A stretch of 64,000 bases of DNA. It comes from Scyliorhinus canicula (lineage: Eukaryota). Both the position numbers and the translations under genes were made by a program. A model generated the notes under the pieces. That model saw only the letters and a program-made list of their open reading frames with translations, ran no database searches and had not been told where the DNA came from. Below are positions 4,735 through 55,800 of the stretch, piece by piece; position 1 is the stretch's first letter; each line of letters starts with the position of its first letter. The stretch is taken from NCBI RefSeq assembly GCF_902713615.1, contig NW_024055469.1:62001-126000 (forward strand), read 5' to 3'.

Positions 4735-5280
4735 CCCGGCCGAGCCCAGCATCGGCACTGCGCATGCTTCAGCTCACAATGCCCAGGGAGTGGTTGACGG
4801 AAGCTCTTGTCCAATAGGAAGAGAGGGGCTGGACTGGAGGATCGAACGGAGTGGCTTGTCCTCCAACCAATCGGAGTGAGTGGGGGGCGGGGCTGGGCCC
4901 CGGTGTCGCCCACGTGATTGGAGCATGCGCAGTGCCGATGACAGTTGACGATTCAGGCAGTAGGATTGGAATACTCCGCTGGTCATATCTCGCCCGCTGA
5001 GGTATGAGGGAGGGATGGAGCCGGTGGATGGGTCGGGAGGTTTCATAAACACTCTGTGTGGGCCCCAATGTCCGAATACGAAGCTCGGATACGACAGTTG
5101 AACCGGCGAACGCTGCTCGGGCTTTTCCCCGAGACAGGCCCCGATGGCCGGGCGCATGCGTAGGGAGCGAGAGGCCTGGCTTTGCTCCGCCTCCCATTCA
5201 CTCTGATTGGCTGGAGGACCAGCCGCTGTCGGTCAGTCCTCCAGGCCCGCCCCCTGGGCTGGAGCAAACCTTTCAGAATC
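4735..5280. promoter_or_regulatory. CpG-rich promoter module of the ZNF cassette (NRF1-like, CCAAT, GC boxes in both orientations)
   Basis: actgcgcatgc (~4757), ccaat (~4811, ~4867), gggggcggggc (~4882), gcatgcgcagt (~4923). An inverted CCAAT/GC unit lies at ~5185-5260. Paralogous modules at ~16.8, 28.6, 40.4 and 47.7 kb. Confidence 0.7.
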
Positions 5281-5302
5281 ATCCCACAGACAGAAGTCTT
5301 CC

Positions 5303-5465
5303 AACACCAGGTTAAAGGTTTGTTTCAAATCAATGACACTGCTCCTTCCTCAGGTGAATAAAGAGGTATGTTCTATAAACATATATATAGACAAAGTCAA
5401 AGATGCAAGACAAGGCTTTGAATGTGAGCATTTGCAGGTAATTAAGTCTTTACAGATCCAGAGAC
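5303..5465 (-). mobile_element. Penelope-like element terminal fragment (degenerate)
   Basis: Matches part of the 8224-8444 element (caccaggttaaag...ctgctccttcctcaggtgaa). Confidence 0.6.
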
Positions 5466-5615
5466 GGGTATATCCTAGTTTGTGGACTATTAGAATAAAT
5501 GTACATTTCTATAAAACCTTGCACTGCCACTGGACCTTCTGAAGTCTTTTAGAGACAATGGAGTACTTTTGAAACATATTCACTGTTGTAATATAAGATG
5601 CTGTAAGTATGCATG

Positions 5616-5850
5616 TTGGATTGGATTTGTTTATTGTCACGTGTACTGAGGTACAGTGAAAAGTATTTTTCTGCAAGCAGCCAACAGATCATTAAGTACA
5701 TGGAAGAAAAGGGAATAAAAGAAAATACATAAGAGGACAACACAAGGTATACAATGTAACTACATAAACACCGGCATCGTATGAAGCATACATGGTGTTG
5801 TGTTAATGAGGTCAGTCCATAAGAGTGTCATTTAGGAGTCTGGTAACAGG
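5616..5850 (-). mobile_element. Rex1/Babar-like LINE 3' end
   Basis: Minus strand ends gtacacgtgacaataaacaaatccaatccaa. A similar copy lies at ~58422-58590. Confidence 0.55.
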
Positions 5851-6146
5851 CCCGGGTTACCGGCCGCCATCTTTACAGAGGACAAGGTGCTGCAGAATGC
5901 ATGTGCTGCGAGCCTGGACCGGATGCCAACTCTCCAGGATTGACTGACTGGAGTCTCCAGGATTTTATTTTATTCGGAGTCACTGGCTGGGCCAACATTT
6001 ATTGCGCATCCCTGATTTTCCTTGAACTGAGTGGCTTTCTAGACCATCTCGGAGGGCATTTAAAGAGTCAACCACATTGCTGTGGTTTGGAATCGTGTCG
6101 GCTAGACCAGGTAAGGATGGAAATTTTGTTTTCCATTCATTCATGG

Positions 6147-51960: not shown

Positions 51961-53331
51961 ATGGAGAAACCGTGGAAATGTGGGGACTGTGGGAAGGAAT
52001 ACAGATTCCCATCTGAGCTGGAGACTCATCGACGCAGTCACACTGGGGAGAGGCCATTCACCTGCTCTCAGTGTGGGCAGGGGTTCACTCGGTTATCGCA
52101 CCTGCAGGCACACCAGCGAGTTCACACTGGGGAGAAACCATTCACCTGCTCTCAGTGTGGAAAAGGATTAATTGATTTATCCAGCCTGCAGTCACACCAG
52201 CGAGTTCACACTGGGGAGAAGCCGTTCACCTGCTCTCAGTGTGGGCAGAGATTCCGTGCTTTATCCAACCTGCGGAGACATCAGCGACTTCACACTGGGG
52301 AGAGGCCATTCACCTGCTCTCAGTGTGGGAAGGGATTCCATACTTTATCCAACCTGCAGTCACACCAGCGAGTTCACACTAGGGAGAGACCATTCACCTG
52401 TTCTCAGTGTGGGAAGGGATTTATTGATTCATCCACCCTGCGGAAACACCGGCGAGTTCACACTGGGGAGAGGCCATTCACCTGCTCTCAGTGTGGGAAG
52501 GGATTCATTGATTCATCTACCCTGAGGAGACATCAGCGAGTTCACACTACGGAGAGGCCGTTCACCTGCTCTCAGTGTGGGAAGGGATTCATTGATTCAT
52601 TCACCCTGCAGAGACATCAGCAAATTCACACTGGGGAGAGGCCATTCACCTGCTCTCAGTGTGGGAAGGGATTCAGTGATTTATCCACCATGCAGACACA
52701 TCAGCGAATTCACACTGGGGAGAGGCCGTTCACCTGCTCTCAGTGTGGGAAAGGTTTTACTCAGTTATCCATCCTGCAGACACACCAGCGAGTTCACACT
52801 GGGGAGAGGCCATTCAGCTGCTCTCAGTGTGGGAAGGGATTCCGGGATTTACCCAACCTGCGGATCCATCAGCGAGTTCACACTGGTGAGCGCCCGTTCA
52901 TCTGCTCTAACTGTGGGAAGGGATTCACTCAGTCATCCAGTCTGCAGACACACCAGAGAGTTCACACTGGGGAGAAGCCATTCACCTGCTCTCACTGTGG
53001 GCAGAGATTCCGAGCTTCATCCAACCTAAGGAACCATCTGCGAGTTCACACTGGAGAGAAGCTGTTCACCTGCTGTCAGTGTGGGAACGCATTCAGTGAT
53101 TTATCCAGTCTGCAGACACACCAACGAATTCACACTGGGGAGAAGCCATTCACCTGCTCTCAGTGTGGGAAGGGATTTATTGATTCATCCATCCTGCAGA
53201 GACATCAGCGAGTTCACACTGGGGAGAAGCCATTCACCTGCTCCCTCTGTGGGAATGGATTCACACAATTATCCAGTCTGCAGACACACCAGCAAGTTCA
53301 CACTGGGGAGAGACCATTCACCTGCTCTTAG
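51961..53331 (+). CDS. Tandem C2H2 zinc-finger protein (456 aa, 16 fingers, class B), no KRAB
   Basis: ATG 51961 MEKPWKC; highly homogeneous 84-bp units ([10 protein letters not shown]); TAG at 53329-53331. Confidence 0.88.
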
Positions 53332-53345
53332 TGTGGGAAGGGATT

Positions 53346-55605
53346 ACATAGAAACATAGAAATATAGGAGCAGGAACAGATCATTTGGCTCTGCGCCTGC
53401 TCTGCCATTCATTATGATAATGGCTTATCATTCATAGCCTAATTCTGCTTTCCCTTCCATATCTTTAATTAATTAATAAACTTGTTTGTCACAAGTACAC
53501 TTACATTGAAATGAAGTTACTGTGAAAAGCCCCCAGTCGCCACATTCCGGCGCCTGTTCAGGTACACAGAGGGAGAATCTCTGTCCTAAATGGTCTACCC
53601 CGTATCCTCAGACTGCGACCTCTGGTTCTGTACCCTCCCACCATCGGGAAAATCTTTCCTGCATCTACCCTGTTAAGTCCTGTTAGGATAATATAGGTTT
53701 CTATGAGATCCCCCATTCTTCTGAACTCCAGTGGATACAATCCTAACTGATTCAATCTCTCATACGTCAGTCCCACCATCCCAGGAATCAGTCTCGTAAA
53801 CCTTCGCTGCACTTCCACCTGAGCAAGAACATCCTTCCTCTGATAAGGAGCCCAATACTGCTCACAATATTCCAGGTATGGCCTCACCAAGGCCCTGTGT
53901 AATAACAGCAAGATATTCCTGCTCCTGTACTTGAATCCGCTCGCAATGAAGGCTAGCACAGCATTTGCCTTCTTTACCGCCTGCTGTAGCTGCATGCTTA
54001 CCTTCAGTGACTGGTGTACAAGGATACCCAGGTCTCGTTGCACATTCCCCTCTCCTAATTTATGGCCGTTCAGATAATAGCCCGCCGTCTCGTTTTTGTT
54101 GTCAAAGTGGACAACCTCGCATTTCTACAAATTATACTGCATCTGCCATTCATTTGCCCACTCACTCAACTTGTCCAAATCACAATGAAGGATCTCTGCA
54201 TCCTCCTCACAGACCCCCCCCCCCCCCCCCCCCACACACACACACACGCAAAGTGGTGTCATCTGCAAATTTGGAGATATTGGATTTTCCTCCCTCACCA
54301 AATCATTAATATATAGGGTGTTGCAGTGGTTATCACTGTTGCCTCACTGTGCTGTGGACCAGTGTTTAATCCTGCCCCGGGTCACTGTCCGTGTGGATAC
54401 AAGTGTCTCCGTGGTCTCACCCCCATAACCCAAAGAAGTGCAGGGTAGGTGAATTGGCCACGCTCAATTGCCCCTCAATTGGTAAAAAGGAATTGGGTAC
54501 TTTAAATTTTTCTTAAAATCATAAATATATCTTGTGAATATCTCAGGTCCTAGCACCGATCCCTGTGGTATCCCACTAGTCACTGCCTTCCAGTTTGAAA
54601 AAGACCATTAATTCCTACTCTGTTTCCTGTCTGCCAACCAGTTTTCTATCCATATCAATTCACTACCCCTAATTCCAAGTGCTTTAATTTTACACATTAA
54701 TCTCTTATGCGGGACTTTGGTCAAAAGCCATCTGAAAGTCCAAATATCACATCCACTGGCTGCCCCTCGTTAACTCTACCAGTTACACCCTTGAAGAATT
54801 CCAGTAGATTTGTCAAGCATGATTGTCCCTTCATAAATCCATGCTGACTGTCCGATCCTGCCACTCGTTTCTCAGTGCTTTGCTATAAAATCTATGAGAA
54901 TGGAGTCTAGAATTTTCCCCACTGCCGATGTCTGATTTGCTGGTCTATAATTCCCTGTTTTCTCTCTCTATCTCTTTTTAAATGGTGGAATTACATAAGC
55001 CAATCTGCAGGAACTGTTCCAGAGTCTATAGAATCCTGGAAGATGACCACCGTTGCATCCACTATTTCTACACGACTTCCCTAAGTACTTCGGTTGCAGA
55101 TTATCAGACCCTGGGGATTTACCACCCTTCAATCCCATCAATTTCACCAACACCATTTCTCTCCTAATATTGAGCTCCTTCAGTTCCTCCCTCTCACTAA
55201 ATCCGGCGCTTCCCAACATTTCTGGTATCTGCTTTGTGAAGAAAGCAGCAAATTATGTATTTATTTTCTCACCCATTTCTTTGTCGCCTCTGATACAATC
55301 AGCCTGATTTCCTGTTTTATGCCATTCCCAACATCACCACTGCAGTTTGGGGGTCTATATACGATGCCCACTAAGTTTTTTGCCCCTTGGTGTTTCTCAG
55401 CTCCACCCATACAGATTCCACATTGTTGGAGCTAATATCCTTCCTATTACATTAATTTACTCTTTAACCAGCACTGCCACTCCACTGCCTTTTCCTTTTT
55501 GTCTGTCCTTCCTAAATACTGAATAGATTCAATTCCCATCCCTGGTCATCCTGCAGCCATGTCTCCATAATCCTGATGATCTCACTCCCGTTTACATCTA
55601 TTTTC
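53346..55605 (-). mobile_element. CR1 LINE (RT, internally deleted) inserted into the ZNF 3' end, with nested SINEs
   Basis: ORF 53558-54043 QRDLGILVHQSLK...ALVRPYLEYC; KSPGSDN at ~55.1 kb; tail (tatgtttc)n at ~53346. Confidence 0.88.
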
Positions 55606-55607
55606 AC

Positions 55608-55800
55608 AATTCACTCGGTATGCCATCTGCAGTCACACCAGGGAGTTCATACTGGGAAGAGGCCGTTCGCCTGCTCTCAATGTGCGATGAGATTTAGTAA
55701 TTTATTGAACTTTCTGAGACAACAACATGTTCACAACAGATTACAGGGATTGGATTCTGCTGTTATTGTTTCTGTTCTCAATTACATCCAGGACTGCATT
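55608..55800 (+). pseudogene. Displaced terminal fingers and conserved post-stop element of the 51961 ZNF
   Basis: HLQSHQGVHTGKRPFACSQC...VHNRLQGLDSAVIVSVLNYIQD. Confidence 0.8.

What the first reader, a model, noticed from the sequence alone, without database searches (positions are those of the whole stretch)
4735..55800. KRAB-less C2H2 ZNF cluster expanding as a modular cassette in TE-dense DNA, with two start-site classes
Seen: eight finger arrays share promoter, intron and acceptor, leader and 3' element in both orientations. Class A (9647, 20160, 31322) has its own acceptor region and starts at M(E/K)GKS. Class B (13500, 27172, 38880, 46769, 51961) has GTG at that site where the leader is intact and starts at or near MEKPW. 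Five of the eight are disabled. Established: tetrapod KRAB-ZFPs and cyprinid FiNZ-ZNFs show birth-and-death evolution linked to TE silencing. Inference: this may be an independent chondrichthyan TE-surveillance ZNF family whose effector module is unknown.
Basis: partly seen in the sequence, partly recalled or inferred. Interest (0 to 1): 0.7.

Follow-up and report, generated by a model that had tools for sequence, protein, structure and literature searches.

The report
Old shark zinc-finger gene cluster
This stretch of small-spotted catshark DNA holds eight copies, two intact and six damaged, of an old shark family of DNA-binding zinc-finger genes without a KRAB domain. It is an ordinary kind of fast-turnover gene cluster, but one subclass is spliced to an upstream exon that adds a short non-finger head to the protein.

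Summary
There are eight tandem C2H2 arrays in both orientations. All eight share a splice acceptor, a ~115-nt leader and a ~200-nt 3' element. Two leader classes exist as described: A = arrays 1, 3, 5; B = arrays 2, 4, 6, 7, 8. Only arrays 1 and 8 have a fully intact ORF.

Three points change the reading.
- RNA reads show a GT..AG splice from an upstream exon (7524-7639) into the class A acceptor of array 1. With the major junction, an ATG at 7528 is in frame with MEGKS and adds 76 residues. RefSeq XP_038643830.1 (Scyliorhinus canicula) is exactly this product. A basking-shark model has the same two-part head. So class A does not simply start at M(E/K)GKS.
- Promoter-like modules with YY1-like and NRF1-like motifs lie 0.9-3.5 kb upstream of four arrays.
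- Class B leaders are fossils: three dead fingers with shared TGAs, drifting about neutrally.

No KRAB, SCAN or other Pfam domain was found upstream. Helix positions -1, 3 and 6 are the most variable. TE targeting is untested. Relatives occur in other sharks and in rays.

The scan has already noted this family many times on other pieces of this genome. Verdict: a new member of a known kind, of moderate interest.

The parts
4755..4934 (+). Upstream block P1 of array 1, also found at 17027-17180 (A3) and 47658-47861 (A8)
   Evidence: blastn 75-79% identity over ~130 nt
5858..5909 (+). Promoter-like block P2 of array 1, with a YY1-like core at 5863-5873 and a decayed NRF1-like motif about 25 nt downstream
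   Evidence: Alignment with the A3, A6 and A8 upstream blocks. Four of the five short-core matches in the window lie upstream of an array in sense orientation. Motif names come from my own knowledge of the consensus sites.
7524..7639 (+). Upstream leader exon E1 of array 1: ATG at 7528, donor GAAG|GTAAAA at 7639|7640, alternative donor at 7646|7647
   Evidence: GT..AG joints in raw RNA reads and in contigs of three other runs; sequence; identical to residues 1-37 of XP_038643830.1
9531..10982 (+). Array 1 (class A) terminal exon: acceptors at 9530|9531 (major) and 9538|9539 (minor), MEGKS ATG at 9647, 13 canonical fingers 9773-10843, stop 10847-10849, 3' element 10866-10982. The exon's 3' end was not mapped; RNA depth continues to 11000, the end of the stretch laid.
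12843..14588 (+). Array 2 (class B): leader 12843-13081, a 243-nt insertion 13095-13337, MEKPW at 13500, TGA just after finger 1, 3' element 14422-14588
17027..17409 (+). P1 and P2 promoter-like blocks upstream of array 3 (core at 17353)
18512..18794 (+). Two partial E1-like leader copies upstream of array 3. The second (18689-18794) ends in a donor-like CAGT|GTAAGA and holds only a short upstream ORF.
20035..21260 (+). Array 3 (class A): MKGKS at 20160, ORF stops at 20724-20726 after five fingers, weak 3' element 21149-21260
26075..27574 (-). Array 4 (class B): leader 27574-27324, start codon is ACG, degenerate fingers, family stop replaced by TGT, 3' element 26253-26075
30573..33006 (+). Array 5 (class A, dead): leader split by insertions at 30721-30949 and about 31008-31293, a young SINE at 31489-31843, frameshifts and stops, 3' element 32898-33006
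37844..39249 (-). Array 6 (class B): leader 39249-39005, finger 1 deleted in part and stopped, nine intact fingers, 3' element 38047-37844
40243..40399 (-). Promoter-like P2 block upstream of array 6 (YY1-like core at 40362, two NRF1-like GCGCATGCG motifs)
45630..47129 (-). Array 7 (class B): leader 47129-46913, ATT instead of ATG at MEKPW, frameshift after finger 6, 3' element 45819-45630
47658..48183 (+). P1 and P2 promoter-like blocks between the divergent arrays 7 and 8, sense to array 8 (core at 48028-48038)
48714..48872 (-). Orphan E1-like leader copy upstream of array 7, with no GT at the homologous donor site
51563..53331 (+). Array 8 (class B, intact): leader 51563-51784, MEKPW ATG at 51961, 16 fingers, TAG at 53329-53331 inside finger 17
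55630..55816 (+). Displaced last finger and 3' element of array 8, cut off by the insertion at about 53345-55600. The family's usual stop is CGA here.

Best explanation
This is a cluster of eight paralogs of an old elasmobranch family of tandem C2H2 zinc-finger genes, in the small-spotted catshark.

Gene plan. Each gene keeps all its fingers in one terminal exon. That exon begins at a conserved acceptor, runs through a ~115-nt leader, and ends in a ~200-nt 3' UTR element.

The ancestral exon read in frame from an upstream exon, through an acidic spacer, into the first fingers.
- Class B: the first three fingers died (shared TGAs, later frame-breaking indels). Translation now starts at a Met in the linker before a constant first finger ([16 protein letters not shown]).
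- Class A: relic fingers 1-2 were deleted. A second, upstream copy of the leader (E1) is spliced on. For array 1 this gives an in-frame ATG and a 76-aa head: an acidic half followed by a basic half.

History. The cluster arose by old DNA-level duplications in both orientations. TE insertions and gene death followed, leaving two intact genes here.

Function. The proteins are most likely sequence-specific DNA binders whose contact residues diversified. That they repress TEs is an inference by analogy (about 40%). The effector is unknown. Candidates are the class A head, the constant first finger and a conserved C-terminal tail.

Shown: the anatomy, the splice, homologs in other species, the absence of known domains, and the pattern of variability. 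Inferred: the ancestral state, the duplication mechanism and the function.
For: - Arrays and Pfam matches.
- Leader, class and 3' alignments.
- Shared TGAs with copy-specific indels that are not multiples of three.
- Class B mean identity: leader 75%, last 100 nt of the intron 72%, finger 1 third codon positions 75.5%, against 95% and 84% at positions 1 and 2.
- Splice 7639|7640 to 9530|9531: 19 raw reads from 13 starts, plus contigs of three other runs, with no depth in the intron.
- Frame arithmetic: 112 + 116 = 228 nt, with no stop in either exon frame.
- XP_038643830.1 (S. canicula) equals E1, a junction codon and 111 window residues.
- The Cetorhinus model XP_078426599.1 has the same acidic-plus-basic head, with [13 protein letters not shown] identical.
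- Models starting at MEKPWKC in Mustelus and Pristiophorus, and the finger 1 signature in the skate Rhinoraja and, in variant form, the stingray Hemitrygon.
- 31 library proteins match the leader profile. Seven were looked up, from Scyliorhinus, Cetorhinus, Heterodontus and Pristiophorus, and none carries a common known domain ahead of the leader.
- No KRAB or SCAN, and no Pfam domain upstream.
- Entropy peaks at positions -1, 3 and 6. Contact dN/dS is 0.5-1.75 against 0.16-0.49 for the rest.
Against: - The laid reads differ from the window by about 2% at many places, in all four runs. The expressed copy may therefore be a near-identical paralog or another haplotype.
- The transcription start and any exon upstream of 7524 are not resolved. 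If the exon starts further upstream, several other ATGs come before 7528.
- The 3' part of the RefSeq model skips exactly seven finger units out of frame, which looks like an artefact.
- About 23 codons of the basic half of the head are read in a frame shifted from the ancestral one, and array 3's E1-like exon gives no in-frame extension. The head may be a lineage accident.
- No binding or repression data exist.
- The dN/dS values come from non-independent pairs with partly saturated dS.
Confidence: 0.75

Rival explanations
1. The family is a set of ordinary gene-regulatory transcription factors, or RNA or protein binders, with no special link to transposable elements. The TE-rich setting only reflects a repeat-rich genome.
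For: No TE-binding test was possible. The copies are old and diverged, unlike a fast ongoing arms race. The constant first finger is under purifying selection. Contact-site dN/dS is near 1 rather than clearly above it.
Against: Variability is concentrated at the DNA-contact positions. The clustered birth-and-death pattern and the metazoan-wide ZNF-TE correlation (PMC10547256) fit TE targeting.
Confidence: 0.35
2. The cassette spread by RNA-mediated or TE-mediated copying of a single transcription unit rather than by segmental duplication. This would explain why homology stops about 100-250 nt before the acceptor and near the polyadenylation signal.
For: Homology between copies is confined to the exon with short flanks. 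Intergenic DNA shares only TE matches. AATAAA or ATTAAA lies near the end of the 3' homology in A7, A1 and A2. In a S. torazame model the YY1-type motif lies about 60 nt before the pre-acceptor block and the leader, with no intron between.
Against: The copies are clustered locally in both orientations, which is not typical of retrocopies. Intron-side sequence is included. No poly(A) tails or target-site duplications were seen. At about 25% neutral divergence, with heavy TE turnover, loss of flank homology is expected anyway.
Confidence: 0.15
3. The upstream ATG and the 76-aa head of array 1 are accidental. The functional protein starts at MEGKS, and E1 is only a 5' UTR exon.
For: ATG 7528 is TTA or TTG in all other leader copies. 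Part of the head is read in a non-ancestral frame. Array 3 has no such extension. MEGKS also has a strong context (A at -3, G at +4).
Against: ATG 7528 also has A at -3 and G at +4, and it comes first in the spliced RNA if the exon starts at 7524. RefSeq models in two shark orders keep the same in-frame two-part head with a 13-residue identical stretch. The variant seen in the reads keeps the frame open: of 20 listed changes 11 are synonymous and none makes a stop.
Confidence: 0.4

Closest known systems
Tetrapod KRAB zinc-finger protein clusters
   Same: Tandem clusters in both orientations. All fingers lie in one terminal exon behind small 5' exons. Birth-and-death turnover with many pseudogenes. 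Variability is concentrated at helix positions -1, 3 and 6. The surroundings are TE-rich.
   Different: No KRAB box was found, and KRAB-ZNFs are sarcopterygian (PMC10547256). Most copies here start inside a finger linker, behind fossil fingers.
Cyprinid FiNZ zinc-finger genes (PMC10547256)
   Same: A lineage-specific non-KRAB fish ZNF family. FiNZ is a short (28 aa) Glu-rich N-terminal sequence with no known fold. The shark leader is a ~37-aa acidic sequence ahead of the fingers, and in class A it is translated.
   Different: Homology to FiNZ could not be tested because no FiNZ sequence was at hand. In class B the shark leader is a dead, non-coding fossil. The shark copies are old, whereas FiNZ genes are numerous and young. 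A role in TE repression is shown for FiNZ and not here.
Fingers-only (poly-ZNF) derivatives of effector-bearing ZNF genes
   Same: The N-terminal coding part is lost and the start codon has moved downstream, leaving a protein made only of fingers.
   Different: Here the loss is shared by class B genes of distant shark orders: Gnomon models in Mustelus and Pristiophorus start at MEKPWKC. It is therefore old rather than sporadic.

Membership tests
Tandem C2H2 zinc-finger proteins (Pfam zf-C2H2, zf-H2C2_2) | Repeated C-x2-C-x12-H-x3-H units joined by TGEKP-type linkers | tested here: met
   13 (A1) and 16 (A8) zf-C2H2 stretches, E-values 9e-81 and 2.6e-95. 84-nt period by TRF.
KRAB zinc-finger proteins | KRAB A box encoded by an upstream exon | tested here: not met
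   tblastn with the KRAB/SCAN-bearing N-termini of six reptile ZNFs finds only finger-like matches. No PF01352 in 72 upstream sense ORF pieces. The RNA-supported upstream exon E1 is leader-like. Limits: pieces under 70 aa were not scanned with Pfam, and only this window was examined.
SCAN or BTB zinc-finger proteins | SCAN or BTB/POZ domain N-terminal to the fingers | tested here: not met
   No SCAN by tblastn. No PF02023 or PF00651 in the upstream ORF pieces. The library relatives of the leader share no common domain upstream of it.
FiNZ zinc-finger proteins | The 28-aa FiNZ motif; restricted to cyprinids | not testable with these tools
   No FiNZ sequence or model was available. The host here is a shark, so membership is unlikely on taxonomy alone.
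Shark/ray ZNF family with constant first finger (noted elsewhere in this scan) | First working finger [10 protein letters not shown]-x-Y-P-S-x-L-E-x-H-x-R-S-H, preceded by (M)EKP | tested here: met
   Present in A2, A4, A7 and A8, in variant form in A1 and A3, and broken in A5 and A6. The same signature is found in S. torazame, Mustelus, Pristiophorus and Rhinoraja proteins.
Shark/ray ZNF family with constant first finger (noted elsewhere in this scan) | Leader made of an acidic spacer plus relic fingers with shared TGAs | tested here: met
   Pristiophorus and Heterodontus models end at the same relic-finger-1 stop.

The most novel reading that the evidence does not exclude
The ~37-aa acidic leader (consensus about [38 protein letters not shown]) may be a shark-specific ZNF-associated N-terminal motif. 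It would be a functional counterpart of KRAB or FiNZ. It would still be translated in class A genes, with a basic NLS-like segment in catshark and basking shark, and silenced as a fossil in class B. The family would then contain both effector-bearing and fingers-only, possibly competing, members.
Probability: 0.2. Interest if true: 0.6.

Novelty: new member of a known kind. Interest (0 to 1): 0.35.

Why it matters
Cartilaginous fishes lack KRAB zinc-finger genes, so how they police repeats, and whether their expanded ZNF families do that job, is open. This cluster provides:
- a clear gene model for one such family: promoter-like block, leader exon, finger exon and 3' element;
- a dated-looking history: fossil fingers, with a start codon moved into a linker before the shark orders split;
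- a concrete candidate for a non-finger head in one subclass, which can be tested in tethering assays.

The general principle, that lineage-specific ZNF families turn over with TEs, is already published, and this scan has already met the family repeatedly.

Tried and rejected
- Rfam (gathering threshold) and ARAGORN on the whole window found nothing.
No DNA of the S. torazame, Mustelus, Cetorhinus, Heterodontus or Pristiophorus relatives could be fetched, so cross-species dN/dS and leader conservation could not be tested.
- Exact look-up of five window ORFs found none in the collection.
- The word search on the N-terminal 60 residues of A8 was swamped by generic poly-ZNF proteins.
- I looked for collinear two-gene duplication units (A3-A4 against A5-A6) and found only TE matches.
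- I looked for an ultra-conserved core in the leader. Within this window the best 30-nt stretch has only about 70% mean pairwise identity.
- A search of this scan's findings by sequence was blank.
- The single weak Pfam hit, MOV-10_Ig-like at E = 7e-4 among 72 pieces, is taken as chance.
Exons were handled by reference and by frame arithmetic only. The joined product was seen only as a protein returned by the library search.
- Binding-site prediction against TE consensus sequences was not attempted, because no recognition-code tool or TE library was at hand.

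
Full report
**1. What is there**

A six-frame scan finds 85 pattern matches. Apart from three relic fingers ahead of arrays and one stray match, they fall into eight arrays on both strands:
- A1 9773-10843 +
- A2 13518-14417 +
- A3 20289-20855 +
- A4 27154-26339 -
- A5 31367/31904-32809 +
- A6 38787-38053 -
- A7 46724-45821 -
- A8 51979-53301 +

Pfam sees only C2H2-type finger and small zinc-binding models in the two intact ORFs: A1 with 400 aa from MEGKS and 13 fingers, A8 with 456 aa from MEKPW and 16 fingers. 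TRF gives the 84-nt finger period in every array.

The setting is repeat-rich:
- a LINE reverse transcriptase lies at 1971-3272;
- about a third of the non-array DNA has another copy in the window, including SINE-like families hit up to 17 times;
- RNA depth over these repeats is enormous.

**2. The shared cassette**

Alignments and an nhmmer search show one leader module in front of every array, plus extra copies upstream of A1, A3 and A7. Each module has a TTTTACAG|G-type acceptor. About 115 nt follow, ending in GAA(C/T)(A/G)TGGAAGGA.

A 3' element of about 200 nt follows the stop in all eight arrays. A8's copy sits at 55739-55816. A ~2.3-kb insertion cut the array after finger 16.

Homology between copies is confined to this cassette. 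The intergenic DNA shares only TE matches.

**3. Two classes**

Class B comprises A2, A4, A6, A7 and A8. Its leader runs into three relic fingers. Each carries a TGA shared by the copies that keep the site:
- at helix position 3 of relic finger 1;
- at the first Cys of relic finger 2;
- at helix position -1 of relic finger 3.

The copies have since gained frame-breaking indels of their own. Mean pairwise identity in class B is:
- leader, 75%;
- last 100 nt of the intron, 72%;
- third codon positions of finger 1, 75.5%;
- first and second codon positions of finger 1, 95% and 84%.

So the leader drifts about neutrally here, while finger 1 is under purifying selection. No 30-nt stretch of the leader exceeds about 70% mean identity within this window.

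The start is a Met in the linker (MEKPWKC). NCBI models in Mustelus asterias and Pristiophorus japonicus start at the same residues. The loss of the front fingers therefore predates the split of the main shark lineages.

Class A comprises A1, A3 and A5. It differs in four ways:
- a different pyrimidine-rich stretch ahead of the acceptor;
- ATG instead of GTG at the start site;
- a deletion that removes relic fingers 1-2;
- an open third relic finger. Position -1 is CAA or CGT, against TGA in class B. All three are one step from CGA, and the changes to TGA and CAA are CpG transitions; this is inference.

**4. State of the copies**

- A1 and A8 are intact.
- A2 has a TGA just after finger 1.
- A3 stops after five fingers.
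- A4 has ACG for the start codon, degenerate fingers and a lost stop.
- A5 has two insertions in the leader, a 99%-identical young SINE in the array, frameshifts and stops.
- A6 has finger 1 partly deleted and stopped.
- A7 has ATT for ATG and a mid-array frameshift.

'Five of eight disabled' is a fair summary.

**5. RNA evidence and the new point**

One set of runs was found for 7400-11000, and four runs were laid on 5001-11000. Raw oligo-dT RNA reads give a GT..AG joint from 7639|7640 to 9530|9531: 19 reads from 13 starts, with 50 nt on the shorter side. A minor joint goes to 9538|9539 (7 reads), and an alternative donor lies at 7646|7647. Contigs of three other runs show the same joints. 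Depth is zero in 7801-8200 and continuous from about 9500 to 11000.

The upstream exon E1 (7524-7639) is itself a copy of the leader module. Its donor GAAG|GTAAAA sits where class B leaders read GGAAGGAGAAA.

By frame arithmetic alone, the ATG at 7528 is in frame with MEGKS in the major form. The ATG has A at -3 and G at +4. The distance is 112 + 116 = 228 nt, and there is no stop in either exon's frame.

**6. Independent support from the library search**

I ran a profile of stop-free leader pieces from this window against the 1.84-billion-protein library. It returned 31 proteins.

- The best is XP_038643830.1, 'zinc finger protein 875-like' of Scyliorhinus canicula. It equals E1 (37 residues), a junction codon and 111 further residues of the window. 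This identifies the species and shows that RefSeq already models this start. The model's 3' end skips exactly seven finger units out of frame and looks artefactual.
- A basking-shark model (XP_078426599.1) has the same head: an acidic half, then a basic half. [13 protein letters not shown] is identical, and NMEGKS and the fingers follow.
- A sawshark model starts directly with the acidic leader, joined to the class A type finger.

**7. Caveats on the head**

- In all four runs the laid reads differ from the window at many places, by about 2%. Of the 20 listed changes 11 are synonymous and none makes a stop. The expressed copy may be a near-identical paralog or another haplotype.
- The 5' limit of E1 is unresolved. 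If the exon starts upstream of 7524, other ATGs precede 7528.
- About 23 codons of the basic half are read in a frame shifted from the ancestral acidic one.
- A3's E1-like exon gives only a short upstream ORF.

**8. Promoter**

The N-termini of Heterodontus, Pristiophorus and S. torazame models share one short motif, translated as ...TAAIF..G.VQQ.AC.... In the window this motif lies upstream of A1 (5842-5928), A3 (17326-17409), A6 (40399-40286, minus strand) and A8 (47986-48183), always in sense orientation.

At the DNA level it reads GCCGCCATCTT(T), followed after about 25 nt by (G)CGCATG(C/T)GC. From my own knowledge these resemble the YY1 and NRF1 consensus sites typical of TATA-less promoters. 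A second block, P1, is shared by A1, A3 and A8. Nothing comparable was found for the other four, and no start site is shown.

**9. Effector question**

- tblastn with the KRAB- and SCAN-bearing N-termini of six reptile ZNFs hits only finger-like sequence.
- Seventy-two stop-free sense pieces of 70 aa or more, upstream of the arrays, give no Pfam domain apart from one chance-level hit.
- The parts of the library relatives upstream of the leader share nothing but the promoter motif.

Within these limits the family is KRAB-less, in line with published surveys (PMC10547256; PMC8455134). Candidate effector parts are the class A head, the constant first finger, and a conserved tail after the stop (LQGLDSAV(V/I)AAVNHIQD). 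That tail is in frame in A4, A7 and the A8 tail, where the stop codon is TGT, AGG or CGA.

**10. Diversification**

Entropy over 76 fingers peaks at helix positions 3, 6 and -1, then 5. Position 2 is mostly Ser.

| Comparison | Contact codons | Other codons |
|---|---|---|
| Within-array dN/dS | 0.5-1.75 | 0.16-0.49 |
| A1 internal five-finger duplication, pN/pS | 0.91 | 0.44 |

This shows faster change at contact sites, not proven positive selection. The pairs are not independent and dS is partly saturated.

**11. Comparison and verdict**

The cluster behaves like KRAB-ZFP and FiNZ clusters in layout and turnover. It is a member of neither. The general ZNF-TE link across animals is published (PMC10547256), but I found no paper on this shark family.

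This scan has noted the same family many times on other pieces of the genome. Those notes agree on the fossil leader and the scar-like TGAs.

What is added here:
- the RNA-backed, RefSeq-matching upstream exon and in-frame head of class A;
- the promoter-like blocks;
- the displaced 3' end of A8.

Noticed in passing
window 26198-26254, 45760-45819, 55739-55800 and the other 3' elements: Behind the family stop lies a conserved in-frame tail, LQGLDSAV(V/I)AAVNHIQD, followed by a second stop. The first stop is TGA in A2, A5 and A6, and TAA in A1. It is a sense codon in A4 (TGT), A7 (AGG) and the A8 tail (CGA). This looks like an ancestral C-terminal tail cut off by a CGA-to-TGA change, or a readthrough context (UGA followed by C).
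   Followed up: partly
window 53345-55600: An insertion of about 2.3 kb, holding SINE-like repeats, splits array 8 from its last finger and 3' element. The gene now ends at a TAG inside finger 17.
   Followed up: partly
window 13095-13337: A 243-nt insertion in the leader of array 2 begins with GT and ends with a pyrimidine tract plus AG, so it is intron-like. Part of it resembles a repeat seen just upstream of array 8's leader (about 51440-51480).
   Followed up: no
window 8588-8640: About 500 raw RNA reads match only from 8588 onward and share one foreign 5' part at 98% agreement. This is a repeat fragment inside the A1 intron that is highly expressed from another locus.
   Followed up: no
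window 9865 and 10453: The RefSeq model XP_038643830.1 joins these two points, skipping exactly seven 84-nt finger units and changing frame (tail LREEL). Contigs also show non-canonical joints between fingers. These are likely alignment or assembly artefacts of repeated fingers.
   Followed up: partly
window 31489-31843 and 43489-43842: Two SINE copies are 98.9% identical, one of them inside dead array 5. This SINE family has therefore been active recently.
   Followed up: no
proteins P0153 (Heterodontus) and P0043 (Pristiophorus): In these models the leader, or another exon, is spliced to a point just after the relic-finger-3 stop (...VEGE|[17 protein letters not shown]). In some sharks the fossil fingers may therefore be removed as an intron, keeping an upstream frame open. 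P0043 is a chimera with a gypsy-like reverse transcriptase fragment and histone H2A sequence.
   Followed up: no
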